Shown here: positions 16,300 through 63,900 of the stretch, piece by piece
Position numbering within the stretch: the first letter of the stretch is position 1
Layout: every line of letters begins with the position of its first letter
Origin: Antechinus flavipes
Taxonomy: Eukaryota
Length of the DNA stretch: 64,000 nucleotides
Assembly (NCBI RefSeq): GCF_016432865.1
Contig: NC_067404.1
Span: 8,184,001 to 8,248,000, forward strand
Direction of reading: 5' to 3'
Position numbers and translations under genes: made by a program
The notes under the pieces: generated by a model
Told to the model about the DNA's origin: nothing
Seen by the model: only the letters and a program-made list of their open reading frames with translations
Databases searched by the model: none

Positions 16300-19100
16300 A
16301 CCAGAGATCTTTTTTTTTCAGTGTAGAACAACATGACCTAAAATTCAAAGAATAAATCCTTAATAGTGAGATCAGGGGAACGAATTTGTCAGGGTGAACT
16401 CCTGCCCTTCTCCAGTGTTCACGGAAGAGGCTGTTGGAAGGGTCCTTTACTTCATAGGGGGGAGGGGAGGGGAGAGAAAAGGGCCCAAGAGGAAGCCAAG
16501 GAGAAAGAGAGGGGGCAGGGGCCTTGAGGGTGGGCTCTAGTCCTTTCACAGCCCCATTATAGGGTCCCCGAGGGATTCTGGGCAGAAGGAGCATCTTCTG
16601 CTTTTTCTTTGGGCTGTACGAGGCCATGGGAGATGTTGGGATCACCCGGCAAGCATACAGGGTCACATCTGCCATTGCCATTGTGCACTGCTGCTGTTTG
16701 TGCGTGTTTGTTGACGTAGCGTGTGTTCTGTCTGTGGTATCCGTCTGTTGCAAGTTTCTATTGCCAGTAATTTGTGTGACCTTTTTGTGTGTGCCGAGTA
16801 TTTGCGTGTATGCCGAGTGGATGTGTGTATTTGGGTGTAGCATGTATGTGTAGGGTTGTCTGTGGTGTGTACTTGTTCTAGTGTGTCTAATGTATATTTG
16901 CGTGTTTATGTATTGATCTATGGTAGGCGCTGTACGTGTGTAACGAGTGTTGCGCGTGCATTTGTGTGTCTAGTGTTCGTGTTTTGTGTATACGTATAGA
17001 GCGGGCCGTTTTTCTGTTGTCTGTATTAGCACGGGGCTTGTTTGTGTGCGGTGTGAGCGTTATTCTCAGGTGGGGGATTTGTGTAGGTATGGAAGTCCGC
17101 GTGTGCTTTATATGGTGCGTTGGATGTGCACAGATTTTTTGGTTTCTTGGGGTTGTATGCTGTGTATAGGAATGAGAATATGTATGCATATAAAAGTGTG
17201 TGTGTGAGGAAATAGCCATGGCACACGGGGGGGGGGGGGTGGGGATGGGGGGGGGTTTCTGGGAGGGGCGCCCCCTGCTGGTACCTGGGGACGAGAAGGG
17301 CAGTTGGTCTCGGCGGAGATCTGTGCTAACGCTCCTCTGGAGCTGCCACGGGGGATCTTGGGGCACTATTCGCACTGGAGGCCTCCTGGGGGACAAAGAG
17401 CAGGGGCCCCCGCGGGGCAGCCGGGGGACGCTCGGGCCCAGCTCTGCCCCTCGGCTCTCAGGGGTCCCGGGGGCCAGACCCCCCGCAGAGAGCCTGGGCC
17501 CCGGGGGAGGGGAGAGGCCAAGGCCACCCGAGATGGGAGAGGGGCCTCCTCCTCCCAGGGCAAGGGGAAGTCCCTCCCCCCCATGTGGCCTGATCCAGCC
17601 CAACCTGGCCCGACCCAGCCCGGCCCGATGGGATCCGGCTCACACAATCTCACCAGAGCGGCCTTTCTAGTGTCCTGAGGGTCTTCCCCGCATCCCCACC
17701 TGGGTGACTCCCCACCAGCCCGCGAGGCAGCAGCTACAGCCCGGGCCTCCATGACACTGGGAGAAGGGGCAGCAGGACCGCTGCAGGACCCACTCCCTGA
17801 AGAGTTTTGGCTTCACCCCCCAAATGAGCCTTGGATTCGCCCCATCCCCTGGTTCTGTCCACCAAAGGTACCCACCCAATCTCAGGTAACGTGGAAACGG
17901 AGGGCAGGAAGCCTAGAACAAGGGCACCTACCACAAATCTTGTAGTTTAGCAACACCTCCAAGTGCTGCAAGTTCCGGGTCTCCCCCGTTCCTGTGAGGG
18001 GGGGGAGGGCACCAGGGTTTCCCACAATAAATCAGGCCGTGATGCAGCCACATCCCCAAGCCCCAAGTGCCTCTCCCCTCCTGGCTGTGCTGGAGGAAGC
18101 TGGGGGCTGTGGATCTAGACCTGGGCTTCAAAGCCCAAATGAGCCCTTGGATTAGCCACACCCCCAGGCTCCCCACCACAGGGATCTCCCCACCATGACT
18201 GTGAAGGGCGAAGCTGGGGGGGGGGTGAGACAAGTTCAGGGCCACCTACCATAAATGGATAATTTGAGCAGCAACATCTCCAAGTTCCACATCACTGGGG
18301 GCTCCCCCCATCTCTGTGCAGGAGGAAGCTGGGGACAGGGAGTCTCGACCAGGCCTTCCCACCCCAAATCAGCCCTTGTCGCAGGCACATCTCAAATTGG
18401 GCACCGCGAGGGCCTCCCCCCACCCTGCTTTGTGAAGGAAGAAGCTGGGGGTAGTGAATCTAGACAAGGGGCTTCATACCCCAAAGCAGCTCTTGTCCGA
18501 GTCATATCCCCCAGTTCTGTCCCCAGGGTTCTCCCCGACATTTCTTTGAAGGAGGAAGCTGAGGGTAATGAGTCTAGGCCCAAATTAGCCCTTGTCAAAC
18601 TGCATCCCCAAGTTCTGGACCCGAGGGGTCTCCCCCAACTTGGAAATGGAGGAAGCTGGGGTTGTGATTCTAGACCAGGGCTTCACCCCCAAAAGACCCT
18701 TGGGTTAGTCACATCCCCTAGTTCTGCACAGCAGAGATTCCCCCCAGTCTCTATTAAGGCGGAAGCTGGGGGCAGAGAGTCTAGAACAAGGGCACCTACC
18801 CCAAATCAGCCTCTACATTAGTGATAACTCCGAGTTCTGCACCCCAGGGGTCTCTCCCCGTTCCTGTGAAGGGGGAGGGGGAGGGCAGTGAGTCTACACC
18901 AGGGTTTCCCACAATAAATCAGGCCGTGATGCAGCCACATCCCCAAGCCCCAAGTACCTCTCCCCTCCTGGCTGTGCTGGAGGAAGCTAGGGGCTGTTGA
19001 ACGAGGCCACTGGGAGCCGGTCGCAGGCCCGGGAGCCGGGGGCACTCACTTTCTCAGGTGGCAGCAGAGGCTGGCCCAGCTGACACCCCGGCTGGGCAGG
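16300..19100 (-). pseudogene. Family copy D1 (CA-repeat-bodied subtype)
   Basis: Donor GTGAGT at 19049, acceptor CTTCTCGTCCCCAG at 17285 and Kozak GTGCCATGG (ATG 17219, MAISSHT). The CA-rich body has in-frame TAGs at 16887, 16878 and 16758. The family C-terminus AEDAPSAQNPSGTL* (stop 16557-16559) lies in the same frame, followed by the family 3'UTR motif GGATTTATTCTTTG. Confidence 0.7.
17770..18960. repeat. ~113-bp satellite array inside D1 intron
   Basis: Same unit as 13760-16070. Confidence 0.88.
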
Positions 19101-19143
19101 GCAGGTCTGGGCAGCCCCAGACGCCTCACCCCCAGGACTGTGG

Positions 19144-19245
19144 CCAATGGAACCTGGTTGTGACATCATCCATTGTGACCCACCAGGTCACAGGTCAGGG
19201 TGGGGCCAATGGCCACTTGGTTGTGTCAAGGGGGGATGGGCGGGG
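19144..19245 (-). promoter_or_regulatory. Candidate D-type promoter: CCAAT, CRE-variant TGACATCA, CCAAT, GC box
   Basis: CCAAT 19144 and 19206, TGACATCA 19161-19168, GGGCGGGG ~19238, about 100 nt upstream of the GTGAGT donor. Repeated at 44371-44437 and, inverted, at 63268-63335. Confidence 0.6.
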
Positions 19246-19799
19246 CAGGCTTGGCCCCTCCCCCCAGACCCAGTCCCAGACCCACCCTCTTGGCCCATCT
19301 CCCCCACCTAGAGCAGGACCCAGGTCTCTGGGCCTGGGGGGGGGGCAGCCCAGCCCAGACAATTCCCCGCCACCCCCCGTGGCAGGACCCCCAGACCGTA
19401 CACAAAACACACACAGGAAAGGGTGCGGGCCTAAGGGAGAAAGCGGCCCGCCCTGGAGGGGAGCCGAACTGGAAGCCCCTTCAGGGGTCAGGCTCAGGAA
19501 ACAGCCAGACCCCTCCTCTCCCCAATAGCAATGCAAATCACAGGGGCCCTGGCAAGACAGAGGCCGGGGCGCCCCTGGGGATTCTGGGAAACTGTAGCCC
19601 TCAGGCAGGGAGCCAGCCAGGGCAGGGGGAGCCTTCGGAGCCCCTGCTGCCCCTGAGCCCGCTGGCCCACAGTCTGGGTTAGGACAGCCAGGGAGCCCCC
19701 GCCCCGTCTCCCACCTTCTTTCTTCAGGCCTAACTCAGAGGGGCTCCCAGAACAGACCCGCTGGGCTGGAGACCCCCACATTTGTGTGGGTGTTCCCCC

Positions 19800-20720
19800 C
19801 TCCCAGTTCCCAGAGCCCCAGGGGTTCTCCCTCCATTTCTGTGAAGTTGGAAAGTGGGGGCACAGAGTCTAGACCAAGTGGCCCAGGCTTCTCACCCCAA
19901 AGGAGCCCTTGTCCCCCCACATCCCCGCATTCACCACCACGGGGGGCCCCCATCTGCCTGTGAAGGAGCAGGCTGGGGCAGTGAGTCTAGACTGAACTTT
20001 CTTACCCCAAAAGAGCCTTTATCCTCCCCCACCCCTGCACTCACCACCTCAAGGGGCTCCTCCATTTGTCTGAGGGAGAAAACTAGGGACAGTGAGTCTA
20101 GACCGAAGCTTCCCACCCCAAAGGAGCCCTTGTCCCCCCACATCCCCGCATTCACCACCGCGGGGGGCCCCCATCTGCCTGTGAAGGAGGAACCAGGGGC
20201 AGTGAGTCTAGACCGGGGGCTTCCCTCCCCACATGAGCCCTTCTCCCAGCAACATCCCTTCATTCACCACCTCAAGGGGCTCCCCCATTTGTCTGAGGGA
20301 GAAACCTAGGGACAGTGAGTCTAGACCGAAGCTTCCCACCCCAAAGGAGCCCTGTCCCCCCACATCCCCGCATTCACCACCACGGGGGGCCCCCATCTGC
20401 CTGTGAAGGAGCAGGCTGGGGCAGTGAGTCTAGACTGAACTTTCTCACCCCAAAAGAGCCTTTATCCCCCCCCACCCCTGCACTCACCACCTCAAGGGGC
20501 TCCCCCATTTGTCTGAGGGAGAAACCTAGGGACAGGGAGTCTAGACCGAAGCTTCTCACCCCAAGGGAGCCCTTGTCCCCCCACATCCCCGCATTCACCA
20601 CCGCAGGGGGCCCCCATCTGCCATCGAAGCCGGAAGGAGGAACCAGGGGCAGTGAGTCTAGAGCGGGGCTTCCCTCCCCAAAGGAGCCCTTGGCCCCCCC
20701 CAGTTCCTCACTCTGGGGAG
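19800..20720. repeat. ~111-bp satellite, homogenised as ~221-bp dimer
   Basis: CACATCCCCGCATTCACCACC starts at ~19918, 20138, 20360 and 20582. Inverted copy at 55720-56420. Confidence 0.9.
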
Positions 20721-21201
20721 CTGCCCCCCGGAGCCTGGGGGGAGGTCTCTCAGGCATCAGGGAAGGGGGGAAGCTGCGGGGGACGGCAGGGGCAGAGGCC
20801 CGGAGCCCAGGGGAAGGCGCAGGCCGGGGCGGGGGATGGAGGGGCCCGGCAGGCTGGGGGGGGGGGAAAGACCAAAGGACCAGGCAGGCTCAATAGAGAA
20901 GGTGTTTATTTTTCTTCTTGCATTCATGCGAGCTCTTTTAGCTTCAGACCAAACTGTTGAGTAACATAAGCAAACTTTCAAAGAATAAATCCGCGATAGG
21001 GGGTCACAGCAAGGGGGTGAGAAGTCCCTGAGGACCTCCTCCCTTTCTCCTATGTCCCGCGAGGAGGCTGCTGGTGGGAGCCTTGAGGCAGAGAGGGAGG
21101 GCAGGGAGAAGGGCCCGAGGGCAGGGGAGGGGGGAGAGGAGGGGGGCGGGGGGGGGGGGGACGGGGCCGAGGGGGCGGGCTCTGGTTCTTTCGGAGCCTG
21201 G

Positions 21202-22703
21202 TTACATGGTCCCCGAGGGGCTCTGGGCGCCGAGAGCGTCTTCGGCTCTTCCGGCCGGCTGGGGAAGGCCGTCGGCGGGGTCTTGGGGTCTCGGGGGCCA
21301 GGGGGCGGGCCCGGCTCTGTCGCCGCCGGTGGGGTCTGGCGCCGCCTGCGAGGCCTGCGGGCCCTGGGCCAGGGCCTGGGAGCCGGCTCCCGAGAACTCG
21401 CCTTCCGTTCGGGCCAGCGTGGCCAGGAGCAGCTCGGGGAGGGGCGCGGGATCTTCGATGTCTTCGCACGTGGGGCACGGCCTGGCGGCCTCGATGAGGG
21501 TCAGGAAAGAATGGACTGCGCCTCCCGGCACGCTCACTCTCATCCTCCCGTCTCCGGCCCCGAACAAGGCGGCATGCTGGTTCTCTAAGTAGGCCTGGGG
21601 CCAGTGGCCATAGCCCAGAGCCCCGGGCCTGGCTCCGGGGATCCCTTCCCCCCTGCGGCCAAGGCTGTCACCAGCAGGTCGGGGATGGCCGGGACCACCC
21701 GAGGATGCAACACTGGGGGGGGCATGGCTCTCCCCCGCCCATGTCCCGCAAAGGGGATACGGATGCTTTCTGCCTGAAACTGGGGCATTCTGGGCCGGGC
21801 CCCTGGAGGTGGCTGAGGTCCGGGTCTTCCATCGGCTCTGCGCTGAGGAACCTGGCCAGGAGTCAGTTGGAAAAGCCTCAACATAGCCACACAGGTGAGG
21901 GGACGTGGCAGGTTCTGGGGGCCGGCTCCCCCTCCCCGGCCTTTTATTTCCTGGCCCCCGTCTCCCGGGCAACCGCCCGTGCCCACCTCACAGGGGAATT
22001 GTGAGGCGGCGCCCCGCCCCGTCGCCACGGTGACCCCAAATGCCGGGGGGTGGTCACGGTGACGGGCCTCGGGCCCCCCCAGGGGGGCTGATTTCCCCAT
22101 CGCGTGGGGGGGACCCGGGGCTCCCCACCCCCAAAACACGGCACGACCCCAAATGCCAGGGGGTGGTCACGGTGACGGGCCTCGGGCCCCCCCAGGGGGG
22201 CTGATTTCCCCATCGCGTGGGGGGGACCCGGGGCTCCCCACCCCCAAAACATGGCACGACCCCAGTGAATAAAGCACAAAAAGTACACACACACCCCATC
22301 GGCCCCGCTTGTGGAAGGGCCCGCTGGGGGGAGCTGGGTCGCGGCCCCCGCACCGGGGTGCGGGCGGGTTTGGGAGGGTCGGGAGCGGGCCCAGGCTCTC
22401 CCATCCTCCCCCCCCTCCCGGCCGGGCGCTCCCCGGGGGCGGCCACGTCCCTGCCGTTAGCCCCTTGGTCCCCAGCTGTCCAACGGGGTCCCGGCCCCGG
22501 GCTCCCGGTGCTGGGGAGGGGCCCCGGGTGTTGAGGAGGGACCCCGGGTGTTGGGGAGGGGCCCCGGGTTCGGAGAGCACCGGCTCGGGGCCTGGTACCT
22601 GGGGAGGGCCTCTCACCTGCATGTTATGTCTGAGGAGTTCTTCAGCATCTGGCCTGACTGTGACTGGCTGCTGTATCCAGGGACTGGAGGCCCCTCCCCC
22701 CAT
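21202..22703 (-). pseudogene. Family copy A (two exons; exon 2 broken by 1-nt indels in G/C runs)
   Basis: Exon 1 22703-22617 (MGGGASSPWIQQPVTVRPDAEELLRHNMQ, donor CAG|GTGAGA). Exon 2 from ~21986 is in frame to AMLRLFQL...GHGRG, then frameshifted at a G run (~21650). Ends AQSPSGTM*; AATAAA at 20905-20910. The indels may be assembly errors. Confidence 0.7.
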
Positions 22704-23475
22704 GTCCCGCTCCCCCAGCTGGCAGCCCCTCCCTCAGGCCCAACTGCCCCCGGACCCCCGCATGCTGGGGCTCGGCTCCCCGGGGGAGGGGATCTCTGAC
22801 ACCGCTGTCCTGCACCACTGAGCCCCAGCAGGCCTGGGGGAGGGCAGACGGGCCGGGGCCACATCCACAAGCGGGCCCCAGCAGCCTGGTAGTCCAAGGG
22901 CCTGCTGTGTTGGGGGAGGAGACCGGGGTAACCTGGAGACAGCCCCAGGCGGGAAGCAGAGCAGGCCTGAGCCTCCCAGCGGGGGGTCTGGCTCCCAAAG
23001 CCCCCACGGCCCCTCCCGTCCCCCCAAAGGCAGCCGCCCCCGAGGAGGGCCCAGGGGGCTGGCGCCGGCTCCCCGTGGAAGGTCTCTTCCCCACGGGCAG
23101 GGCCCGGTCCCACAGCGGGCACTGCCACACAGCCTCCTCCGCCAGTCTGCCCGGGGTCAGCGGCCCCTCCCCCTGCTCCTGGGGCCCAGGGACTGCTGCC
23201 CTGCCGGGTCCCATGGGCCCCCCCTCTGAGCCAGAGCCTCTTGCTCGGACTCGCCCCGTCCTTTAGTCCCTCCCTGGCCCCCAGGACCCTGCCCCTGCCT
23301 CCTGTCTCTCTTTCCCTGCGCCTCCCTCCGGTCTCGCCCTCAGGGACCATCCCCAGCCTTCCTAGGACCCCAGAGTCAGCCCTGGAAAGGAGGTTACAGG
23401 TCACATGGGCCATGGCCCGTCTCTAAGGGCGCCTCAGAGGCCGTCTCCTCAGGCCTGGTCATTTCTCCCAACAGG

Positions 23476-23640
23476 AGGCCGGGGCCAGAGGGGCAGCAGG
23501 CCGGGGCCAGAGGGGACGGAGGCTGGGGCCGGAGGGGCAGGAGGCCGGGGCCGGAGGGGCAGCAGGCCGGGGCCGGAGGGGACGGAAGCCGGGGCCAGAG
23601 GGGCAGGAGGCCGGGGCCGGAGGGGATGGAAGCCGGGGCC
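23476..23640. repeat. 22-bp G-rich minisatellite (~7 units)
   Basis: GGCCGGGGCCGGAGGGGCAGGA-type units; inverted, longer copy at 53134-53515. Confidence 0.9.
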
Positions 23641-25470
23641 AAAGGGCACATGCAGCAGCATGGCTCCCAGCCGCCTCCTCTGCCCCCAACCAGCATGGCC
23701 CTCCCCCCTCCATGTCTCGCCCCCCCCCCCCCGACACTCTCCCTTTGGTTGCTGGGGCATTTCCAAGCAAGGCCTGCCCTGGCTGCCTCCGACCGCCTTC
23801 CCTGGCCCGGCCTGGCCTCCACTCCTCCCTGAAAGCTGGACGGGCCGTGGGGCCCCAGCCCTCGTCCTCCCCCTTCATTGGGCACAAGGGGAAGCTGGCC
23901 AAGCCTGCTAGCTGCAGGCTGATGGGCCTGACTTGGAGCTCCCGAAAACCCCTCCAGGGAGCCCTGAGTCCCCTCTGTTGCCTCAGGGGGGTCCCCCCGG
24001 CCCTTCTCTGCCACTCCCCGATGGCACCCTGAGGGGGCGCTAGTGCCCTGGGCTAATCCACCTGCCCCCAGCGCCCCCTTCTCCCCCACCCTTCTCCCCC
24101 ATCCTCCAGGGGGCAGCAGCCCGGGAGCCCGAGGCCTAGGAACAGCCTTGAGTCCGGCCAGTGACAGAACCTCCCCAGAGCGGCCTTTCTAGTGTCCCGG
24201 GGCCTCCCCAGCTTCCCCCCCGGGGGACTCCCACCGGCCTGTCAGGGAGCCACCACTCCCCGGCCCCCGTGAGCCTCAGTTTCCCCCTCTGTAACAGGGC
24301 AGCCTTCTAGTCAGTGGACTCTCTGGCCTCCTCCCGCTCTGAGTCCTTTGGCCCCAACTGATGAGGAGCTGAGGCGGGGGGGGGGGACGATTTCTTGCCC
24401 CTTGGCTCCCACCCCGCTGAGCATCACTAGGGCAGAATGTGCCCCCTGCCCCGTTCCCCTGGTAAGGGCCCGGGGAGTCGGCGGGCCCGGCCGGGGGTCC
24501 CTGCGGTGACGGCCGGGGTGGTCGAGTTCTCTGCCCCCCCCTGAGGCCCCTGCAGGGTGAGAAAGCCTCCGTGTGCCCTCTGTTTTCCCTGGAAGCTGCC
24601 CCCGAACCGCGGGGCCGGCCCTTTGGGCCAGACCCAAACAAGGAGCTTCTTACCCCCCAGGGCACTTATTGGGGCCGGGTCTCGCGCTCCCGTCGCACCG
24701 CAGTCTCCCCCACAACTTCCCCGGCTCTGCGGGACCCTGGGGCAGGCAGAGGGGGCGCCCCTGGGGCTGCGGGGAAACTGCAGCCCTCAGGCAGGGAGCC
24801 AGCCAGGGCAGGGGGAGCCTTCGGGGCCCCGCTGCGCCCGAGCCCGCCGGTACAGTCTGGGCCGGGACAGCCCGGGAGCCCCCGCCCCGTCTCCCACCCG
24901 CTTTCCTCAGGCCTAACTCAGAGGGGCTCCCAGGACGGACCCGCTGGGCTGGAGACCCCCATGTTCCTGTGGGCCTTCCCCCCTCCCCCTTCCCAGAGCC
25001 CAGGGGTCTCCCTCCTCTCTGTGAAGGAGGAAGCTGGGGACAGACCGGGGCTTCCCGGCCCAAAGGCTCCTTGAATCGGCCCCATCCCCAAGGTCCGCAC
25101 CCCAGGGGGCCCCCCCGCGGCCCATGGGGGCGTCTCTCAGGGCATCGGGGCGTAACTGGAAGTCGGGGGCAGGGAGGAGGTCCCAGGGGCGGCAGGGGGG
25201 AGGCCGGGCAGGCTGCGGGGAGGGGGGAAAGAAGACCAAGGCAATTTCAACAGAGAAAGATCTTTATTTTTATTCTTGGACTGAAGCTCTTTTAGCGTTA
25301 GTTGTACGTTGTAAGGCAACAAATGTTAAAATACAAAGAATAATCACCAACAGCCAGACCAGACCAAAGGATTTAAAAAGATGATTCCGGATCTTCTGCC
25401 CTGTTTAGATGTCATTGTGGGGGGCTGTTGGGGGGAGCCTTCCGGCCCTGGGGGAAGGAAGGGAGAGGGT

Positions 25471-27014
25471 CTAAGTGGAAGGGAGGGGAAAGAGAAGGGG
25501 AATGGCCGGGTTGGTGAGAGTGGGCTCCAGTCCTTCCTCAGTCCCATTACATGGTCCCTGTGAGGTTGAGGGCAGAAGGTTCTGCGGTTCTTCTTCCTGG
25601 CTGTGCTTGACCATCGGGGAGATCTTGGGATCTTCAGGGCCAGCAGGCAGGGCCATATCTGCCACCGCCATCGCTGAGTGCTGCTCCCCAGCCTTGTGGG
25701 GAAGACTGGGAGGGGGGCTGGCCAGAACCTTCTCCTGACCTTTCTCCTTAGGTTCCGGCCAGGATAGCGAACAGGAGTGAGGAGAGTCCCTTAGATCTTC
25801 GACGTCTTTGCCATCACCAACTGCCGCTCCCTCGGTGCCATGATCCGGAGCCTGGGAGGGGGCCTGCTCGGTGGTTGCTCCTGAGATTTCTTCTTGGGCC
25901 TTGATCAGAGCTGCCAGCAGGCCTTCGGTGTTTGCGTGAGATCTTCGATATTTGCCTGAATGGGGCACTGCGTGTGGTCCTCGCTGAGGGTCAGGAGGGA
26001 TGGGGGCCCGCCTCAGTTGTATACCTGCTCTCATCCGTCCGTCACCAGCACCAATTAAAGCTCCTGGATGAATGTGAGGGTGTCCATAAGGCCAGCGGCT
26101 GTAGGCCATTGGAGATGGCATGACTCCTGGGATCCCCTCCCCCCTGCTACCCAAAACTGTCATGAACAGGTCATGGAAAACAGGGCCCACTCTTGCATAA
26201 GGTACTGATTGTGAAGTTGTTATCCCTCGTCCATGACCTGCAGGAGGAAGACGGCCGCCTCCCAGCTGAAACCCCATCATCCCGGGCCAGGCCCCCGCGG
26301 GCGGCTGGGGTCCGGGTCTTCTTTCGGCTACTCTCCTCATGGGGATCTGACCAAGAGACAGTTGCAGGGGTCTTAACATAGCCATAATGGTTGGGAAAGT
26401 GAGCACTGTTGTATTTCTCTCACCCCACCACTGGCAGCAGCTCCAAGGCAACCAGCCCTGTCATCACTCCAGAGGGAGTGTGACGTAATAAAGGCCCCCT
26501 GCCATGATAGCCTCAGAATTGTGGGGGTTGCAGTCATGACACACTTAAAGGCCCAGCCCCCAGCTCAACTGGCGGGCGAGACCGGGGCTCCCCTCCCCCC
26601 AAACGCGACACGACCCCAATGAATAAAGCACGGAAAGTACACGCACACACCGCCGTCCCCGCTTGTGGAAGTGCCCGCTGGGGGGAGCTCAGTCGCGGCC
26701 CCCACACCGGGGTGCGGGCGGGGTTGGGAGGGTTGGGAATGGGCCCAGACTCTCCCATGCCCCCCCCAGCCGGGTGCTCCCAGGGGCAGGCCACGTCCCT
26801 GCTGTTAGCCCCTTGGTCCCCAGCTGTCTAACGGGGTCCCGGCCCTGAGCTCCGGGTGCCGGGGAGGGGCCCCGGGTTCGGGGAGCACCGGCACGGGGCC
26901 TGGCGCCCGGGCAGGGCCGCTCACCTGCATTTTGTTACGTCTGAGGAGTCCTTCTGCATCGGGCCTGACCGTGACCGGCTGCTCCAGCCATGGCTTAGAG
27001 GCCCCTCCCCCCAT
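25471..27014 (-). CDS. Family copy B, uncharacterised Pro/Gly-rich protein (exon 2 ORF 304 aa from ATG 26385)
   Basis: Exon 1 27014-26925 (MGGGASKPWLEQPVTVRPDAEGLLRRNKMQ). ORF MAMLRPLQL...GHGRG...GEGIPG...ALIGAGDGR...LLAALIKA is colinear with A and C; good Kozak ACCATTATGG; AATAAA ~25263-25274. Confidence 0.65.
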
Positions 27015-29034
27015 GTCCCGCTCCCCCGGGCTGGCAGCCCCTCCCTCAGGCCCAACTGCCCCCAACGGACCCCCACATGCTGGGGCTCGGCTCCCTGGGG
27101 GGGAATCTCTGACACCGGGTGTCCTGCACCACTGAGCACCAGCAGGCCTGGGGGAGGGCAGACGGGCCGGGGCCACATCCACAAGCGGGCCCCAGCAGCC
27201 TTGCAGTCCAAGGGGAGGAGACCGGGGTAACCTGGAGAAAGCCTCCCTCTGGTCTCTCCCTCAAAGGCCATACCCAGCCTTCCTAGGACCCCAGAGTCAG
27301 CCCTGGAAGGGAGGTTAAAGGTCTCTAGGGCGCCTCAGAGGGAGATGGTCCCCTCAACATGTGGGGGTCCTGCACAGAAGGTGGCAAAGTCACCACCCTT
27401 CCATATACAAACTACCCATCCTGAGGTAGCCACCAGGGCATCCTGGGAGCACAGTGACCTCTCTGGTGCCCTCTGCACATGCATGCAGCCCCACATGTGA
27501 GTGGTCCTGGGCCCACCCTCACAAACAGGCCCATAGGCAGTTCCCCACGTGTGCGTGCACCAGGCACGTGAACATGAGGTGTCCCCCCTCACACCCATGA
27601 GGGCCCACACAACGCCCCCTCCGCAGGGCACCCCGGGATGTGTTTCAGGGAGTACTCACTCGCCCCCCCCCGCCGCCAGTTGGGGCCCGATGGGGCTTAG
27701 CCCTCCCCCCCCCGCCCCCGGCGGGGGCTGTTAGGGGAGGCCTGAAATCCGCCCCTCTGAGGAGCTTGTGGCAGAATAAAGCCATAGCCTGTCCCACCGC
27801 AGGATCCAGGGGAGGCCGATTCCGGGCCACTTTCTTCTTGGAGGGAGATTGGCTGGGCTTCCCTCCCCATTGCCTTGCCCCACAGCCCCTCCCCCAGGGA
27901 CTGCCCCCCCAACCTCCTGGAACCCTCGGGCGGGGGGGATTCTGAGTCCTCTTTTTGCAGGAGGTCCCCCTTGGCCTGCCTGACAGGTCTCAGCTCCCAG
28001 AGCAGGCCAGGACAGCAGCCCCTTTCCACCGGCTTTCTAGGATTCCCAGAAAACTCATGGGATCACAACCCCCCTGGGGTCCATGGTGGAGCTATTGTCC
28101 CCCTTTCACAAAGTCAGGCTCCCAGAGAGGAAGGGGTTGTTAGCTCTGGACAGGTCAGCTCTTCTCTCCCTTTTCTCTTTCTCTGTCTCTCCTTGGCTGT
28201 GTGTGTGTGTGTTTTCTCCCCAGCCATGTACGCCCCCCTCCACCCCCCAGCTGACATCACCTTAGCGGGTCACCTGACGTGCTGCTCTTGGTCCCAGAGC
28301 GACACAGAACACGGCTCATGCCCATTTCACAGGACAGCCCTTCAGCTGCAGGTGGACAGAGCTCCTGAGCCCCCCCCTCCCCCAGACCCTTCCCCTCCAG
28401 GCTCAGCGTCCCCAGGCCTTCCCACCGCTGCTGCTCATCTGTCCCCAAGCAAGGGCGGGGCCCACGGAGAGAGGGGAACTCTGCCTCCCACTGGGCGCTA
28501 CCGGGCAAAGCCTGGAAAAGTGCTCTGGGTGCCTGCAGGGGCGCCTTCCCCATCCCCCAACGAATGGGGCTTCTGGCCCCGAGGCGGGGACACAGAGAGC
28601 CAAGGGAGGGGGTTTCCAGCCCGGCAGCCGCGCCCCTTGGGCGGCTTCACACATGGACTCCTCCGCCTGGCGGTCAGGGGAGGCCGCGCCCGGGGCACGC
28701 CGCCGGCGCCCAACACGCGTGTGCTGAGAACGAGCCCGGCCTTACGCGGGAGCCCGGGACATCCCGAAGGGGCTGCTTGGGGCAGAAAGCGGGAGGGCTC
28801 CCGGCCACACGCTGCACCCACTGCAGCCCCGGCGGCGCTTGGGGGGTGGTACCTAAGGTGGGGGTTGGGTGGTCATGTGGCCTGGGATGGACCTGCGGCC
28901 CACAGGCAGGGGGAAAGCCCCGGGGCAGCCAGCGAGGGCAAGGAGAGAGAACCAGAGGCTCGTGTATGAAATGGGGGACATCTTTGGGCATCCCCCAGGC
29001 CAAGAAGGGGGAAGCAAGAGGAAGAGCATCCCCC

Positions 29035-29312: not shown

Positions 29313-29317
29313 GGGCC

Positions 29318-52200: not shown

Positions 52201-52700
52201 CCCCGGCCGGGCCCGCCGACTCCCCGGGCCCTTACCGGGCCCACAGGAAGGAGGGAACGGGGCAGGGGGCACATTCTGCCCTAGTGATGCTCAGCGGGGT
52301 GGGAGCCAAGGGGCAAGAAATCGTCCCCCCCCCTCACCCCCCGCCCCAGCTCCTCGTCAGTTGGGGCCAAAGGACTCAGAGCGGGAGGAGGCCAGAGAGT
52401 CCACTGACTAGAAGGCTGCCCTGTTACAGAGGGGGAAACTGAGGCTCACGGGGGCCGGGGAGTGGTGGCTCCCTGACTGGCCGGTGGGAGTCCCCCCGGG
52501 GGGGAAGCTGGGGAGGCCCCGGGACACTAGAAAGGCCGCTCTGGGGAGGTTCTGTCACTGGGCCGGACTCAAGGCTGTTCCTAGGCCTCGGGCTCCCGGG
52601 CTGCTGCCCCCTGGAGGATGGGGGAGAAGGGTGGGGGAGAAGGGGGCGCTGGGGGCAGGTGGATTAGCCCAGGGCACTAGCGCCCCCTCAGGGTGCCATC
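49272..52700. repeat. Inverted repeat arm matching 33900-37297 (C block)
   Basis: Near-identical reverse complement; ORF pairs 35469-36569/50002-51141 and 35936-36127/50444-50635 match. Confidence 0.92.
49376..51141 (+). CDS. Family copy C' (375 aa from ATG 50014; longer if exon 1 is spliced)
   Basis: Exon 1 49376-49465 MGGGASRPWLEQPVMVRPDAEGLLRRNNMQ, donor at 49466, exon 2 from 50002; intact ORF; AATAAAAATAAA at ~51423-51434. Confidence 0.72.
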
Positions 52701-53133
52701 GGGGTGAGGCAGAGAAGGGCCGGGGGACCCCCCTGAGGCAACAGAGGGGGCTCAGGGCTCCCTGGAGGGGTTTTCGGGAGCCAAGTCAGGCCCATCAGCC
52801 TGCAGCTAGCAGGCTTGGCCAGCTTCCCCTTGTGCCCAATGAAGGGGGAGGACGAGGGCTGGGGCCCCACGGCCCGTCCAGCTGTCAGGGAGGAGCGGCC
52901 GGCGGCAGGGGGAGAGCAGGCACCGAGGCAAGCCCCAGCCGGCTCCCGGAGAGGGAGGCCGGGCCAGGCCAGGGAAGGTGGTCGGAGGCAGCCAGGGCAG
53001 GCCTTGCTCGGAAATGCCCCAGCAACCAAAGGGAGAGTGTCGGGGGGGGGGGGGCGAGACCTGGGGAGGGGGAGGGCCATGCTGGTTGGGAGCAGAGGAG
53101 GCGGCTGGGAGCCATGCTGCTGCATGTGCCCTT

Positions 53134-53515
53134 TGGCCCCGGCCTCCTGCCCCTCCGGCCCCGGCCTCCTTCCCCTCCGGCCCCGGCCTGCTGCCCCTCC
53201 GGCCCCGGCCTCCGTCCCCTCCGGCCCCGGCTTCCTGCCCCTCCGGCCCCGGCCTCCTTCCCCTCCGGCCCCGGCCTCCTGCCCCTCCGGCCCTGGCCTC
53301 CTTCCCCTCTGGCCCCGGCCTGCTGCCCCTCCGGCCCCGGCTTCCGTCCCCTCCGGCCCCAGCCTCCTGCCCCTCCGGCCCCGGCCTCCTGCCCCTCTGG
53401 CCCCAGCCTGCTGCCCCTCTGGCCCCGGATTCCGTCCCCTCCGGCCCCGGCCTCCTGCCCCTCTGGCCCCGGCCTCCTGCCCCTCTGGCCCCGGCCTCCT
53501 GCCCCTCCGGCCCCG
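53134..53515. repeat. 22-bp minisatellite (~17 units)
   Basis: GGCCCCGGCCTCCTGCCCCTCC units; the translation repeats every 22 aa (3 units). Confidence 0.92.
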
Positions 53516-53735
53516 GTCTCCTCCCCCAACACAGCAGGCCCTTGGACTACCAGGCTGCTGGGGCCCGCTTGTGGATGTGGCCCCGGCCCGTCTGCCCTCC
53601 CCCAGGCCTGCTGGGGCTCAGTGGTGCAGGACAGCGGTGTCAGAGATCCCCTCCCCCGGGGAGCCGAGCCCCAGCATGCGGGGGTCCGGGGGCAGTTGGG
53701 CCTGAGGGAGGGGCTGCCAGCTGGGGGAGCGGGAC

Positions 53736-55241
53736 ATGGGGGGAGGGGCCTCCAGTCCCTGGATACAGCAGCCAGTCACAGTCAGGCCAGATGCTGAAGA
53801 ACTCCTCAGACATAACATGCAGGTGAGAGGCCCTGCCCGGGCACCAGGCCCCGTGCCGGTGCTCCCCGAACCCGGGGCCCCTCCCCAACACCCGGGGTCC
53901 CTCCTCAACACCCGGGGCCCCTCCCCAGCACCGGGAGCCCGGGGCTGGGACCCTGTTGGACAGCTGGGGACCAAGGGGCTAACGGCAGGGACATGGCCGC
54001 CCCTGGGGAGCGCCCGGCCGGGAGGGGGGGGAGGATGGGAGAGCCTGGGCCCGCTCCCGACCCTCCCAACCCCGCCCGCACCCCGGTGCGGGGGCTGCGA
54101 CCCAGCTCCCCCCAGCGGGCCCTTCCACAAGTGGGGCCGATGGGGTGTGTGTGTGTGTACTTTTTGTGCTTTATTCACTGGGGTCGTGCCGTGTTTTGGG
54201 GGTGGGGAGCCCCGGGTCCCCCCCACGCGATGGGGAAATCAATCCCCCTGGGGGGGCCCGAGGCCCGTCACCGTGACCACCCCCCGGCATTTGGGGTGGT
54301 GCCGTGTTTTGGGGGTGGGGAGCCCCGGGTCCCCCCCACGCGATGGGGAAATCAGCCCCCCTGGGGGGGCCCGAGGCCCGTCACCGTGACCACCCCCCGG
54401 CATTTGGGGTCACCGTGGCGACGGGGCGGGGCGCCGCCTCACAATTCCCCTGTGAGGTGGGCACGGGCGGTTGCCCGGGAGACGGGGGCCAGGAAATAAA
54501 AGGCCGGGAGGGGGAGCCGGCCCCCAGAACCTGCCACGTCCCCTCACCTGTGTGGCTATGTTGAGGCTTTTCCAACTGACTCCTGGCCAGGTTCCTCAGC
54601 GCAGAGCCGATGGAAGACCCGGACCTCAGCCACCTCCAGGGGCCCGGCCCAGAATGCCCCAGTTTCAGGCAGAAAGCATCCGTATCCCCTTTGCGGGACA
54701 TGGGCGGGGGAGAGCCATGCCCCCCCCAGTGTTGCATCCTCGGGTGGTCCCGGCCATCCCCGACCTGCTGGTGACAGCCTTGGCCGCAGGGGGGGAAGGG
54801 ATCCCCGGAGCCAGGCCCGGGGCTCTGGGCTATGGCCACTGGCCCCAGGCCTACTTAGAGAACCAGCATGCCGCCTTGTTCGGGGCCGGAGACGGGAGGA
54901 TGAGAGTGAGCGTGCCGGGGAGGCGCAGTCCATTCTTTCCTGACCCTCATCGAGGCCGCCAGGCCGTGCCCCACGTGCGAAGACATCGAAGATCCCGCGC
55001 CCTCCCCGAGCTGCTCCTGGCCACGCTGGCCCGAACGGAAGGCGAGTTCTCGGGAGCCGGCTCCCAGGCCCTGGCCCAGGGCCCGCAGGCCTCGCAGGCG
55101 GCGCCAGACCCCACCGGCGGCGACAGAGCCGGGCCCGCCCCCTGGCCCCCGAGACCCCAAGACCCCGCCGACGGCCTTCCCCAGCCGGCCGGAAGAGCCG
55201 AAGACGCTCTCGGCGCCCAGAGCCCCTCGGGGACCATGTAA
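53736..55241 (+). CDS. Family copy A' (exon 2 ORF 227 aa from ATG 54558)
   Basis: Exon 1 53736-53822. Exon 2 ORF MLRLFQL...GHGRG...YGHWPQAYLENQHAALFGAGDGR...RRHRRS...AQSPSGTM* is intact; AATAAA ~55532. A 1-nt loss in a G run near 54505 would break the exon1-exon2 frame. Confidence 0.65.
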
Positions 55242-55719
55242 CCAGGCTCCGAAAGAACCAGAGCCCGCCCCCTCGGCCCTGTCCCTCCCCTCCCCGCCCC
55301 CCTCCTCTCCCCCCTCCCCTGCCCTCGGGCCTTCTCCCTGCCCTCCCTCTCTGCCTCAAGGCTCCCACCAGCAGCCTCCTCGCGGGACATAGGAGAAAGG
55401 GAGGAGGTCCTCAGGGACTTCTCACCCCCTTGCTGTGACCCCTATCGCGGATTTATTCTTTGAAAGTTTGCTTATGTTACTCAACAGTTTGGTCTGAAGC
55501 TAAAAGAGCTCGCATGAATGCAAGAAGAAAAATAAACACCTTCTCTATTGAGCCTGCCTGGTCCTTTGGTCTTTCCCCCCCCAGCCTGCCGGGCCCCTCC
55601 ACCCCCCGCCCCGGCCTGCGCCTTCCCTTGGGCTCCGGGCCTCTGCCCCTGCCGTCCCCGCAGCTTCCCCCCTTCCCTGATGCCTGAGAGACCTCCCCCC
55701 AGGCTCCGGGGGGCAGCTC

Positions 55720-56420
55720 CCCAGAGTGAGGAAGTGGGGGGGGGGACCAAGGGCTCCTTTGGGGAGGGAAGTCCCGCTCTAGACTCACTGTCCCCGGCTT
55801 CCTTCTTCACAGGCAGATGGGGGCCCCCCGTGGTGGTGAATGCGGGGATGTGGGGGGGACAAGGGCTCCTTTGGGGTGGGAAGCTTCGGTCTAGACTCAC
55901 TGTCCCTAGGTTTCTCCCTCACAGACAAATGGGGGAGCCCCTTGATGTGGTGAGTGCAGGGGTGGGGGGGGATAAAGGCTCTTTTGGGGTGAGAAAGTTC
56001 AGTCTAGACTCACTGCCCCAGCCTGCTCCTTCACAGGCAGATGGGGGCCCCCCGCGGTGGTGAATGTGGGGATGTGGGGGGACAAGGGCTCCTTTGGGGT
56101 GGGAAGCTTCGGTCTAGACTCACTGTCCCTAGGTTTCTCCCTCAGACAAATGGGGGAGCCCCTTGAGGTGGTGAATGAAGGGATGTTGCTGGGAGAAGGG
56201 CTCATGTGGGGAGGGAAGCCCCCGGTCTAGACTCACTGCCCCTGGTTCCTCCTTCACAGGAGATGGGGGCCCCCCGCGGTGGTGAATGCGGGGATGTGGG
56301 GGGGATAAGGGTTCATTTTGGGAGGGAAGCCCGGGCCACTTGGCCTAGACTCTGTCCCCACCTTCCACCTTCACAGAAATGGTGGGAGAACCCGTGGGGC
56401 TCTGGGAACTGGGAGGGGGA
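55720..56420. repeat. ~111-bp satellite, inverted
   Basis: Reverse complement of 19800-20720. Confidence 0.9.
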
Positions 56421-58473: not shown

Positions 58474-58507
<34 letters not shown>

Positions 58508-61850: not shown

Positions 61851-62699
61851 CCCACACAGGAGACACACAAATCTACACCACTCCCAAATACTCACATACC
61901 ACACATTATAGACACACAAATACCCATACTACACACATGCTAGACATGTAAATATACACACCACACGCAAATACACGGTTTACATCGTAAACACACACGA
62001 GTACATCCCAATACTGCTGCCACACAAATGTCCACGCACCAGACATACAAATCCACAGCCCACACAAATAGATTCGCTGGCTCCACAAAAGCAGCCCCAC
62101 ACAGCGGTAGGCAATGGCGATGGCAGCTATGACCCTGCAAGGTGGCCCCGAAGATCCCCGGGTCACCCGGAGACTCGCACAGCCAGAGGGGAGAAGCAAA
62201 GACTCTCCTTCTGCCCAGAAGCCTTCAGGGGCCGTGTAATGGGGGGCGGTCAATGACTGCAATCCACCCTCAGGGCCCCTCTTCTTCCCTTGACTTCCTC
62301 TTGGGTCCCTCCCCCCCCCCCCACCATGGCCAGACTCCTCCCTGCAGAAGTCTCCTCCGTGGGCATCCGAGAGCTGCAGAAGGCCCGGATCGCCCTCCCA
62401 CCCCCTGTCCTCCCACCTATCAGTGGGAACATGATTCTTTCGCTTTGAGCTTATGTTGCTTTGCCCTCTGCCTTCTATAACGAAAACAGCTTTCTTCAAT
62501 TCAAGAAGAAAAATAAAGCTCTTTCCCTGGTGAAATTGCCTGTGGCCTTTAGGATTTTGTCTCCCTTCCCCACAGCCTGCCCGGGGTCCTCCGCCTATCC
62601 CTTCCACGGGGCTCCAGAGCTCTGCCCACCTAACTCCCTGTCATCTGCCGTGCCCCGGCTGCGCCTCCCTTCCCCTGGCTTTGGGGCTGTGCCCATGAT

Positions 62700-62980
62700 C
62701 CTGTAAGAGGCGCCCCACCGCGCTGAGGGGAATGGACACTCAGGGTATGGAATTGGAGATGGGGACGATCCGAGGGCCTATGTGAGGTGTGAAGCCCTGG
62801 TGTAGACACACTGCCCCGACTTCCTCCTTCACAGAGATAGCCGCCGAGATCTTGGGGATGCGAAACTGGGGCTGATTTGGGGTGGGAAGCCCAGGCTCCC
62901 TGGGCTCCATTTATTGCCCCCACCTTCCAATTTCACAAAGACGGTGTCCCTGGGACACTGGGAACTGGGAGGGGGACAGC
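62700..62980. repeat. Degenerate ~113-bp satellite, inverted
   Basis: CTTCCTCCTTCACAGA and GCTGATTTGGGGTGGGAAGCCC motifs. Confidence 0.65.
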
Positions 62981-63267
62981 ACACAACAAAGGTGTTTCCA
63001 GGTCCGGCTCCCCCCCAAGGCGGGCCCGCTTTCTCCCTTGTGCCCGCGCCCTTTCCTGTGTGAGTGTTTTGTGTACGATCTGGGGGTCCTGCCACGGGGG
63101 GTGGCGGGGAATTGTCTGGGCTGGGCTGCCCCCCCCCACGAGAGATCCAGAGACCTGGGTCCTGCTCTAGCTGGGGGAGATGGGCCAAGAGGGTGTGTCC
63201 GGGTCTGGGGGGGAGGGGCCAAGCCTGCCCCGCCCATCCCCCTTGACACAAGCAGGAGATTCAGGCC

Positions 63268-63900
63268 ATTGGGCCCCGCCCCGCCCTGTGACCTGGTGGG
63301 TCACAATGGATGATGTCACCGCCAGACTCCATTGGCCACAGTCCTGGGGGTGAGGCGTCTGGGGCTGCCCAGAGCTGCCCGTGCCCAGCCTGGTGTCATC
63401 TGGGCCAGCCTCGGCTCCCGCCCGGAGCTAGGGAGCAGGCCGCGGGCAGCAGCGCCAGTGTCTGTGCCACCTGAGAGAGTGAGTGCCCCTCGCTCCCGGC
63501 TCCGGGGCCTGGCTTCCTGGGGCTTGGGGACCCAAGGGGGGGGCTGAGACATGGGGCAATGGACGGGCAGGAGGGCTCTGGGGTCCTGGGAAACTCTTCA
63601 GGGAGCGGGTCCTGTGCCCCTTCCCCAGGCTCATGGAGGCCCGGGCTGTACGGGCTGGGGGGGGGGGTCACCCGGGTGGGGATGCGGGGAAGGCCCCCGG
63701 GACCCCTGAGAGCCGAGGGGCAGAGCTGGGCCCGAGCGTCCCCCGGGTGCCCTGGGGGGCCCCTGCTCTTTGTCCCCCAGGAGCCTCCAGTGCGGATAGT
63801 GCCCCAAGATCCCCCATGGCAGCTGCAGAGGAGCCTTAGCCCAGATCTCCAACCTGACAGACTGCCGTTCTCCTCCCCAGGTACCAGCAGGGGGCGCCAT
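63268..63900 (+). pseudogene. Family copy D5: promoter, exon 1 and intron (63479-63880) only
   Basis: ATTGG, GC box, TGATGTCA (63311), ATTGG, donor GTGAGT at 63479 and acceptor CTCCTCCCCAG at 63880; then switches to satellite-like sequence without the MAISS start. Confidence 0.6.

What the first reader, a model, noticed from the sequence alone, without database searches (positions are those of the whole stretch)
16300..63900. Unrecognised ampliconic gene family (~11 copies, 4 subtypes) of disordered Pro/Gly/Arg-rich proteins
Seen: A, B and C copies share exon 1 MGGGAS(R/S/K)PW(L/I)(E/Q)QPV(T/M)VRPDAE(G/E)LLR..MQ with a CAG|GTGAG donor; A differs by a clean 3-nt indel. Exon-2 motifs are colinear: LR(P/L)(F/L)QL, PG(P/A)QP, GHGRG, GEG(I/M)PG, YGHWPQAY, AL.GAGDGR, RRHRRS and LLLATLAR. 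The family shares a terminus (AQSPSGTM*, ARNPAGPM*, AQNPPETM*, AQNPSGTL*) and a 3'UTR (GGATTTATTCTTTG ... AATAAA...TTCTCT.TTGA). I recognise no known domain. Established: multicopy palindromic families of fast-evolving disordered proteins are typical of sex-chromosome germline genes. Inference: a marsupial-specific germline family, possibly shaped by genetic conflict. The exon-2 acceptors (GAG, weak pyrimidine tract) are atypical, so splicing is uncertain.
Basis: partly seen in the sequence, partly recalled or inferred. Interest (0 to 1): 0.85.

Follow-up and report, generated by a model that had tools for sequence, protein, structure and literature searches.

The report
Marsupial X-linked palindromic orphan gene family
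A mirror-image cluster on the yellow-footed antechinus X chromosome carries six copies (plus two remnants) of a marsupial-only gene for small unstructured proteins; two of the three main gene subtypes have a core that barely changes between dasyurid genera, but where the genes are expressed could not be tested.

Summary
The family is real, but parts of the description need correcting. The window is Antechinus flavipes chromosome X at about 8.2 Mb.

- **Copies:** six copies carry the promoter, exon 1 and core (A, A', B, B', C, C'). Two remnants (D, D') keep only the C-terminal tip and 3'UTR. That makes 8 copies, not about 11.
- **What checks out:** the motifs, termini, 3'UTR and CAG|GTGAG donors.
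- **Acceptors:** A and B have canonical, conserved CAG acceptors further downstream, and RefSeq models in Antechinus, Sminthopsis and opossum join there; the devil A-type model uses another acceptor.
- **Evolution:** the core is not fast-evolving. Between Antechinus and Sminthopsis the A core has 20 differences, all synonymous. The B core has dN/dS 0.06. C and the tails are looser.
- **Range:** relatives turned up only in marsupials (dasyurids, koala, opossum). There is no Pfam or PDB match, and AlphaFold predicts disorder.
- **Architecture:** the inverted-repeat layout and gene order are shared with Sminthopsis. The 5' modules evolve in concert while the cores keep subtype identity.
- **Not tested:** expression, germline role and genetic conflict.
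- **Prior work:** the genes exist in RefSeq as uncharacterised or misnamed predictions, and I found no paper on them. The scan has not noted this family on other DNA.

The parts
16281..16618 (-). D remnant. It keeps only the C-terminal tip (..AQNPSGTL*) and the shared 3'UTR, with no core and no exon 1.
   Evidence: 3'-end profile hit, E = 2e-44. Terminus at 16583. tblastn finds only the last ~60 residues.
20870..22928 (-). Copy A. Exon 1 is 22703-22617 and exon 2 is 21851-21202; the poly(A) signal is at 20910. In the CDS it differs from A' only by three single-base homopolymer length changes, which break the frame as assembled.
   Evidence: 98.5% identical to A'. G7/G6, G4/G3 and C3/C4 differences, with no substitutions in the CDS. 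The assembly is PacBio long reads polished with short reads.
25227..27243 (-). Copy B, intact. Exon 1 is 27014-26925, the intron is 578 nt, and exon 2 is 26346-25471. It encodes 321 aa with a derived C-terminus (..LLFPLPST*).
   Evidence: The Sminthopsis orthologue is P0005, with core dN/dS 0.03-0.07.
35135..37426 (-). Copy C. Exon 1 is 37193-37104. Exon 2 runs to stop codon 35471-35469. The candidate acceptor is before 36452 (..CAG|AGAATAGAT). The tail is a Gly-Ile/Ser repeat.
   Evidence: RefSeq XP_051824859.1 (P0006) matches this copy's tail and uses a later acceptor.
45513..47286 (-). Copy B'. Exon 1 is 47060-46971 and exon 2 runs from 46504. A 2-nt deletion after GAGDGR splits the ORF. 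A 143-nt deletion relative to B is also present. The ancestral-type terminus AQNPPETM* ends at 45856.
   Evidence: Both deletions and the terminus are shared with Sminthopsis L002.
49272..51480 (+). Copy C'. Exon 1 is 49376-49465 and exon 2 runs to the stop at 51139-51141. The canonical CAG is mutated to CAC at 50107-50109. An in-frame CAG|AGA acceptor lies before 50119. RefSeq uses 50358|50359. A conserved upstream ATG lies at 50014. Poly(A) signals are at 51423 and 51429.
53511..55570 (+). Copy A', intact. Exon 1 is 53736-53822, the intron is 768 nt, and exon 2 is 54591-55241. It encodes 245 aa, identical to RefSeq XP_051824863.1. The poly(A) signal is at 55531.
62106..62550 (+). D' remnant. 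Only the shared 3' end and the poly(A) signal at 62512 remain, preceded by CA-rich tandem arrays at 59148-61976.
20059..37297 (.). Left arm of the inverted repeat (genes on the minus strand, in the order C, B, A, D when read along the minus strand). It carries an extra segment holding B relative to the right arm.
   Evidence: Self-comparison. Sminthopsis L003 shows the same B-A-D order.
49272..56385 (.). Right arm (C', A', then the D' side). B' lies head-to-head with C' in the spacer.
   Evidence: Sminthopsis L002 shows the same B'(-) C(+) A(+) D(+) order.

Best explanation
**What is shown**
- The region is a lineage-restricted, X-linked family of real protein-coding genes in a long-lived inverted-repeat (palindrome-like) cluster of the dasyurid X chromosome.
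- Each gene has a short exon 1 of 29-30 codons starting MGGG(A/V)S, a phase-0 intron of roughly 0.5-0.8 kb in A and B (uncertain in C), and one large exon.
- The large exon encodes a core of about 150 residues followed by a variable low-complexity tail. Products are roughly 245-370 aa.
- The core is made of short conserved motifs: PGPQP, GHGRG, GEGIPG, YGHWPQAY, GAGDGR, RRHRRS and LLLATLAR.
- The protein is predicted to be disordered apart from two short helices.
- The core is under strong purifying selection in subtypes A and B, weaker in C.
- Subtypes A, B and C are older than the dasyurid radiation.
- The arms stay 96-98.5% alike within a species.
- The promoter-plus-exon-1 module is homogenised among paralogues within a species, while the cores keep their subtype identity. 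The genes are therefore evolutionary chimaeras maintained by gene conversion.
- The locus is 65% G+C in a 36% genome.

**What is inferred**
- The protein probably acts as a disordered adaptor that binds partners through its linear motifs.
- It is possibly tethered to membranes by N-myristoylation of Gly2. MGGGAS(R/K/S) fits the consensus G-{EDRKHPFYW}-x(2)-[STAGCN]-{P}.
- The basic RRHRRS cluster next to the LLLATLAR helix is a likely phospho-regulated or binding site.
- By analogy with X-palindrome genes of primates and mouse, testis-biased expression is the most likely setting (about 50%).
- Arm-to-arm conversion would then protect hemizygous copies from decay.
For: **Identity and location**
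- P0001 and P0006 of A. flavipes match window copies, on CM028223.1 at 8,227,736-8,249,241.
- Chromosome 7 is 86,570,782 bp and is the X.

**Coding and constraint**
- A core, Antechinus against Sminthopsis: 155 codons, 20 differences, 17 at third codon positions, no amino-acid change, and only in the annotated frame.
- B core: 25 differences, 4 amino-acid changes.
- Exon 1 has dN/dS 0.13-0.44, and its lengths of 87, 90, 90 and 108 nt are all multiples of 3.

**Splicing**
- Donors and CAG acceptors are conserved in three genera.
- The same junction is used by RefSeq models P0001, P0003, P0005 and by the opossum model P0007.

**Phylogeny and concerted evolution**
- The A, B and C clades have 98-100% support.
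- The 5' modules cluster by species: 96-99% identical within Sminthopsis, 65-72% between genera.

**Palindrome conservation**
- The two Sminthopsis loci, which lie in opposite orientation on the chromosome, are 97-98.6% identical over more than 7 kb, with the same gene order.

**Fold, range and composition**
- AlphaFold gives pLDDT 49 and pTM 0.13, with helices only at residues 20-28 and 169-177.
- Only marsupial relatives were found.
- G+C is 0.654 against 36.21% for the genome.
Against:
- Exact-product look-ups found no independent transcript contigs.
- Runs that hold 64-78% of the sampled words of a stretch that includes introns and spacer are of unknown kind ('?'), so they do not show splicing.
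- RefSeq models disagree on the acceptor:
  - the devil model P0002 uses an upstream acceptor;
  - P0006 and P0009 use the later ..PQ|(A/P)Y.. site.
- C-type copies have lost the canonical CAG.
- A conserved in-frame ATG 33-39 nt upstream of the A and B acceptors allows a single-exon protein.
- Arm identity of 96-98.5% is below the >99% of classic amplicons.
- Myristoylation and membrane association rest on a motif only.
Confidence: 0.8

Rival explanations
1. The family is real and conserved but has a somatic rather than germline role. It could be brain-, skin- or gland-expressed signalling adaptors, like the eutherian X-linked BEX/TCEAL/GASP cluster. In that case the palindrome is only a by-product of local duplication and gene conversion, and no sexual conflict is involved.
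For: - The A and B cores are under very strong purifying selection. That is unlike many testis ampliconic genes, which often evolve quickly.
- Copy number is low and stable: two per subtype, in the same order in two genera.
- 5' modules homogenised across divergent coding regions, together with raised G+C, are the pattern described for BEX/WEX/GASP (PMC1274310).
Against: - X palindromes conserved for 25 My or more and carrying poorly characterised gene families are mostly testis-biased in primates (PMC8327919).
- No expression data either way were obtained here.
Confidence: 0.35
2. The proteins are made from the large exon alone. In A and B translation would start at the conserved in-frame ATG just upstream of the annotated acceptor (54558; 26385). 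In C it would start at MKQQ (50014). Exon 1 would then be a 5' leader or upstream ORF, or belong to a minor isoform.
For: - Koala P0008 and the GPC3-nested relative P0011 start MKEQ.. inside the large exon and encode the LRPFQL-type segment.
- The C-type MKQQ..LRPFQL segment is open, free of indels and at dN/dS 0.27 between genera, while 1-nt indels lie immediately upstream.
- In A and B, all 3 substitutions in the 11-13 codons before the acceptor are synonymous.
- High word share of the whole stretch in runs would fit unspliced RNA, but this is ambiguous.
Against: - The exon-1 ORF, its ATG and its GT donor are kept in every copy and genus, with lengths that are multiples of 3 and dN/dS below 0.45.
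- The CAG acceptor and its pyrimidine tract are invariant in three genera.
- The opossum model joins a different upstream exon at the same acceptor.
Confidence: 0.25
3. The ORFs are not genes. They would be chance open frames in G+C-rich duplicated DNA, with their similarity maintained only by gene conversion.
For: - G+C-rich sequence gives many long spurious ORFs on both strands.
- Copies A and B' are frame-broken as assembled.
Against: - Between genera, substitutions fall almost only on third codon positions of one frame: 17 of 20 in A and 19 of 25 in B. All other frames show stops and high dN.
- Orthologous subtypes are kept in three genera, and relatives exist in koala and opossum.
- The breaks in A are homopolymer length differences typical of long-read consensus errors.
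Confidence: 0.03

Closest known systems
Conserved X-chromosome palindromes with poorly characterised gene families in primates (Jackson et al. 2021, PMC8327919; GC-biased conversion, PMC8981503)
   Same: - X-linked inverted repeats carrying a protein-coding family.
- Arms are kept similar within a species while orthologous arms diverge between species.
- Gene order is conserved across genera, and the coding sequence is protected.
- G+C is raised.
   Different: - The arms are short (about 3-7 kb of matching blocks) and only 96-98.5% identical, against more than 99% in primates.
- The host is a marsupial.
- The left arm carries an extra gene (B).
- Testis bias was not tested.
- There is no sequence relationship to any primate palindrome gene.
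Eutherian Xq22 BEX / WEX (TCEAL) / GASP cluster (Winter and Ponting 2005, PMC1274310; BEX proteins as disordered hubs, PMC4303428)
   Same: - Lineage-restricted X-linked families of small disordered proteins.
- The coding sequence lies essentially in one 3' exon.
- A shared 5' module is homogenised by gene conversion independently of the divergent coding regions.
- Local G+C is elevated.
   Different: - No sequence similarity: there is no Pfam hit.
- Here the converted 5' module includes a short coding exon.
- The cores are strongly conserved rather than rapidly evolving.
- The arrangement is inverted-repeat.
Eutherian X-linked cancer-testis disordered families (GAGE/PAGE/XAGE, SPANX, SSX, CT47); listed from my own knowledge
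   Same: - Multicopy and X-linked.
- Small, intrinsically disordered products with no fold.
   Different: - No Pfam match at E up to 1-5.
- The few shared short motifs I recalled are not evidence of relationship.
- Expression class is unknown here.
- This family is old (at least the dasyurid-opossum split) and constrained.
RefSeq predictions of the family itself: XP_051824863.1 'collagen alpha-2(I) chain-like', XP_051824859.1 'PE-PGRS family protein PE_PGRS5-like' (A. flavipes); LOC141549205, LOC141549206 and LOC141548434 (Sminthopsis); LOC111721678 and LOC116420269 (devil); LOC110200327 (koala); LOC130456146 (opossum)
   Same: These are the same genes or their orthologues and paralogues.
   Different: - The collagen and PE-PGRS names come from low-complexity composition only, with no collagen or PE domain.
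- No publication names these loci.
- The family, its palindrome and its selection pattern are not described.

Membership tests
Sex-chromosome palindrome / ampliconic gene family | Located on a sex chromosome | tested here: met
   The window maps to CM028223.1 (86,570,782 bp), which is chromosome 7 and the X. Homologues in devil, dunnart and opossum lie on contigs of 83.1, 89.9 and 89.4 Mb.
Sex-chromosome palindrome / ampliconic gene family | Inverted repeats with very high arm-to-arm identity (>99% in the classic definition; >=97% in some recent ones) | tested here: inconclusive
   Antechinus arms are 96.5-96.7% over 2.9-3.5 kb, and the A/A' gene unit is 98.5%. Sminthopsis arms are 97-98.6%. 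This is below the classic threshold, and long-read consensus errors may lower the figure.
Sex-chromosome palindrome / ampliconic gene family | Arms carry a protein-coding gene family preserved by selection | tested here: met
   dN/dS is 0-0.07 in the A and B cores, with a frame-specific synonymous pattern.
Sex-chromosome palindrome / ampliconic gene family | Testis-biased expression | not testable with these tools
The kind and tissue of the runs are not given.
GAGE/PAGE/XAGE, BEX/TCEAL and other named X-linked disordered families | Match to the family's Pfam profile | tested here: not met
   No Pfam family at E <= 1 for A, B or C, and none at E <= 5 for the other members, apart from half a C2 domain in the opossum models and two chance-level hits far below their cut-offs, in koala P0008 and in P0010.
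Collagen alpha-2(I) (the RefSeq name of copy A') | Gly-X-Y triple-helix repeats and fibrillar collagen C-terminal domain | tested here: not met
   No Pfam hit. The sequence shows no Gly-X-Y periodicity.
PE-PGRS (the RefSeq name of copy C) | N-terminal PE domain; mycobacterial origin | tested here: not met
   No Pfam hit. The resemblance is limited to the Gly-rich tail.
N-myristoylated proteins | Met-Gly start with the consensus G-{EDRKHPFYW}-x(2)-[STAGCN]-{P} | tested here: met
   MGGGAS(R/S/K)P in the six window copies and MGGGVSRP in Sminthopsis. This is a motif match only.
N-myristoylated proteins | Myristate actually attached by N-myristoyltransferase | not testable with these tools
   This needs metabolic labelling or mass spectrometry.

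The most novel reading that the evidence does not exclude
Marsupials independently evolved their own X-palindrome gene family. On this reading an orphan disordered protein arose before the dasyurid-opossum split, expanded into subtypes on the dasyurid X, and has been kept for tens of millions of years as evolutionary chimaeras: a converting 5' module joined to subtype-specific, near-frozen cores. It would be expressed in the male germ line. One subtype (B') would keep a frameshift in two genera despite ongoing conversion with B because the split or truncated product is itself functional.
Probability: 0.25. Interest if true: 0.7.

Novelty: new member of a known kind. Interest (0 to 1): 0.55.

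Why it matters
- Gene families borne on X palindromes have been characterised mainly in primates and mouse, where they were acquired independently. A conserved, selection-protected counterpart on the marsupial X would be a third independent case, so general rules can be tested.
- This case behaves unusually for the class. The A and B cores show almost no amino-acid change between genera, while the promoter and exon-1 module is rewritten by conversion.
- Antechinus males die after one mating season, so X-linked germline genes in this genus are of particular interest if testis expression is confirmed.
- Practically, RefSeq names two members 'collagen-like' and 'PE-PGRS-like'. These are misnomers.
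- One copy appears frame-broken, probably through assembly error.

Tried and rejected
  - The Rfam scans were split around them.
  - Local sandbox scripts did read the whole window file. One local BLAST used the window as its database.
- **Transcript contigs:** exact-product look-ups for spliced or unspliced transcripts found nothing beyond the genome records.
- **Domain and fold searches, all empty:**
  - Pfam.
  - PDB sequence profile.
  - ESM Atlas, best score 0.68, chance level.
  - Rfam.
- **Third word-indexed search:** querying with the GPC3-nested relative found only itself.
- **Literature:** searches for the LOC identifiers and for marsupial X amplicons found nothing specific.
- **Rejected ideas:**
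  - A GAGE/PAGE relationship that I recalled from short motifs, because there is no profile support.
  - The upstream extension of the A and B ORFs as coding, because indels between genera break the frame.
  - Long ORFs in 37.5-45.5 kb, which are G+C-driven noise.

Full report
**Where the window comes from**

A protein search with the copy at 54456-55238 returned dasyurid proteins. Two Antechinus flavipes RefSeq proteins match window copies. XP_051824863.1 (P0001, 245 aa) corresponds to A'. XP_051824859.1 (P0006) matches copy C in its repeat tail. P0001 lies on CM028223.1, which is 86,570,782 bp, at 8,227,736-8,249,241. The genome paper lists chromosome 7 with exactly that length and states that it corresponds to the devil X. 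The region is therefore X-linked, about 8.2 Mb from one end of the assembled chromosome.

**Checking the observation**

- Exon 1 (MGGGAS..MQ) occurs six times, each followed by CAG|GTGAG.
- The A type is 87 nt and the others are 90 nt.
- All colinear motifs and the four termini are present.
- The 3'UTR word occurs five times against 0.14 expected, and the poly(A) context is shared.
- Profile scans give six promoter/exon-1 modules and eight 3' ends. D and D' retain only the last ~60 codons' worth of similarity plus the UTR.

The order along the window is D(-), A(-), B(-), C(-), B'(-), then C'(+), A'(+), D'(+). The inverted matches are 96.5-96.7% identical, and the A/A' gene unit is 98.5% identical. 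The count is therefore 8 copies, 6 of them with a core, rather than about 11.

**Gene structure**

- **Canonical acceptor in A and B.** RefSeq models in Antechinus and Sminthopsis join exon 1 to ..|VPQRR (A) or ..|IPMRR (B). At those points the DNA reads ..ctcctggccag|G and ..tctcttggtcag|A. These sequences are invariant in Antechinus, Sminthopsis and Sarcophilus.
- **Opossum.** The opossum model uses the same acceptor behind unrelated upstream exons.
- **Upstream region is not coding.** More than about 70 nt upstream of the acceptor, indels between genera break the frame.
- **C-type copies.** They have lost the CAG in both genera. They keep an in-frame CAG|AGAATAGAT 9 nt downstream and an open, indel-free MKQQ.. 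segment upstream. RefSeq instead uses ..WPQ|AYVENQ.
- **Resulting products.** With the coordinates in 'parts', A', B, C and C' translate without internal stops to 245, 321, 357 and 370 aa.
- **Copy A.** It is broken only by three single-base homopolymer length differences, with no substitution in 651 nt of CDS. In a PacBio assembly polished with short reads, this looks like consensus error.

**Evidence that the ORFs code for protein, and how they evolve**

Orthologous loci were fetched from Sminthopsis crassicaudata (L002-L004) and Sarcophilus harrisii (L005, L007).

| Segment (Antechinus vs Sminthopsis) | Result |
|---|---|
| A core, 155 codons | 20 differences, 17 at third positions, 0 amino-acid changes; dS 0.18 |
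| B core | 25 differences, 4 amino-acid changes; dN/dS 0.06 |
| C, RIDG..WPQ | dN/dS 0.59 |
| C, AYVENQ..SEAES | dN/dS 0.25 |
| Tails | dN/dS 0.26-0.45 |
| Exon 1 | dN/dS 0.13-0.44; lengths always a multiple of 3 |

- In all five other reading frames the same substitutions give stops and high dN.
- The nucleotide conservation profile of A jumps from about 80% to 95% or more roughly 50 nt before the acceptor. It stays there to the end of the core. The last 200 nt of the 3'UTR are about 90% conserved.
- 'Fast-evolving' is therefore wrong for the core.

**Family range and history**

- A profile search of 1.84 billion representative proteins found eight proteins.
  - Three were dasyurid members already recovered in the first search (P0003, P0005, P0006).
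  - One was a further devil subtype, P0009, lying about 57 kb from the devil A copy.
  - One each came from koala (LOC110200327) and opossum (LOC130456146).
  - One was an unnamed UniParc entry.
  - The last was a distant relative at E = 2.4e-4.
- That distant relative is a single-exon 498-aa ORF nested in GPC3 at X 42.06 Mb. RefSeq labels it 'glypican-3 isoform X1'.
- A second, alignment-based search added nothing outside marsupials.
- In a tree of cores, A, B and C each form clades with 98-100% support that contain two or three genera. A and C are sisters (94/95). Koala, opossum and the devil extra subtype are unresolved.
- The paper dates the dasyurid-didelphid split at 71.7 Ma, which gives the family a minimum age.

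**Architecture and conversion**

- In Sminthopsis the same orders are found: B'(-) C(+) A(+) D(+) and B A D.
- The two Sminthopsis loci lie in opposite orientation on the chromosome and are 97-98.6% identical over more than 7 kb.
- The 400-nt module around the exon-1 ATG clusters by species. It is 96-99% identical among Sminthopsis A, B, B' and C, 76-91% identical among Antechinus subtypes, and 65-72% identical between the two genera.
- This is the opposite of the cores. The 5' module and the core therefore have separate histories, as described for the BEX/WEX/GASP cluster (PMC1274310).
- The amplicon region is 65.4% G+C in a 36.21% genome. This is consistent with GC-biased conversion reported for X palindromes (PMC8981503).

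**Protein features**

- There is no Pfam, PDB-sequence or Atlas relative.
- AlphaFold2 with the family alignment gives mean pLDDT 49 and pTM 0.13. It predicts only two short helices, at residues 20-28 in exon 1 and 169-177 in LLLATLAR.
- The start MGGG(A/V)S(R/K/S) fits the N-myristoylation consensus. This is established knowledge applied to the sequence, not a test.

**What could not be done**

- The look-up of sequencing runs listed six runs holding 40-78% of the sampled words, but their kind is '?'.
The cap then blocked a retry.
- Expression, splicing in vivo and tissue therefore remain unknown.

**Verdict**

This is a genuine, conserved, marsupial-restricted X-linked gene family in a conserved inverted-repeat cluster. 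It is already predicted in RefSeq but is unnamed or misnamed, and it is undescribed in the searchable literature. It is a new member of the known class of X-palindrome gene families. Its notable properties are near-frozen A and B cores, a converting 5' module, and an old frame-split subtype (B') shared by two genera.

Noticed in passing
L006:10001-11497 (A. flavipes X, 42.06 Mb): A single-exon 498-aa ORF lies nested inside the glypican-3 gene and is labelled 'glypican-3 isoform X1' in RefSeq. It has no glypican domain. It is a distant relative of the family (E = 2.4e-4), starts MKEQ.. like the koala gene, and carries many tandem GxGDGR..RRS..FPD modules. The devil has a 546-aa version.
   Followed up: partly
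window 47060-45856 (-) and L002:4283-2724 (-): Subtype B' keeps the same 2-nt frameshift and 143-nt deletion in Antechinus and Sminthopsis. Meanwhile the first ~500 nt of its exon 2 stay 99% identical to B within each species. Both ORF halves remain open.
   Followed up: partly
window 21654, 21527, 21444 (copy A) against 54789, 54917, 54999 (copy A'): The only CDS differences between the two A copies are single-base homopolymer length changes. These are probably assembly errors in a duplicated G+C-rich region, so the pseudogene status of A is doubtful.
   Followed up: yes
P0012 / P0007 (opossum LOC130456146): The opossum models join the first half of a C2 domain to the family's large exon at the same acceptor as dasyurid A and B. 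The best single-domain PDB match for the C2 half is synaptotagmin-like protein 4 (3fdw). This may be a chimaeric gene or a chimaeric prediction.
   Followed up: partly
window 50640-51110 and 35500-35940; L002:6660-7120: The C-type tail is a hypervariable repeat. It is GG(I/S)GG units in Antechinus, with indels between C and C', and GGDSDSSSGHDG units in Sminthopsis.
   Followed up: no
window 55366-55570 and equivalents: The last ~200 nt of the 3'UTR are 82-97% identical between genera. That is more conserved than the coding tail just upstream, and may mark a regulatory element.
   Followed up: no
window 59148-61976; 13774-15848; 17809-18947; 33250-33860; 19800-20700 and 55726-56400: Several tandem-repeat arrays flank or separate the gene copies. 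One is a 2.8-kb A/C-rich array (G+C about 38%, strong negative GC skew) before D'.
   Followed up: no
L007:10001-11346 (devil X, 7.24 Mb): The devil has a further subtype (P0009, 171 aa) about 57 kb from its A copy. Its core is closer to the koala and opossum genes, and its RefSeq model uses the later ..Q|PYLESQ acceptor. No counterpart with a core lies in this Antechinus window.
   Followed up: partly
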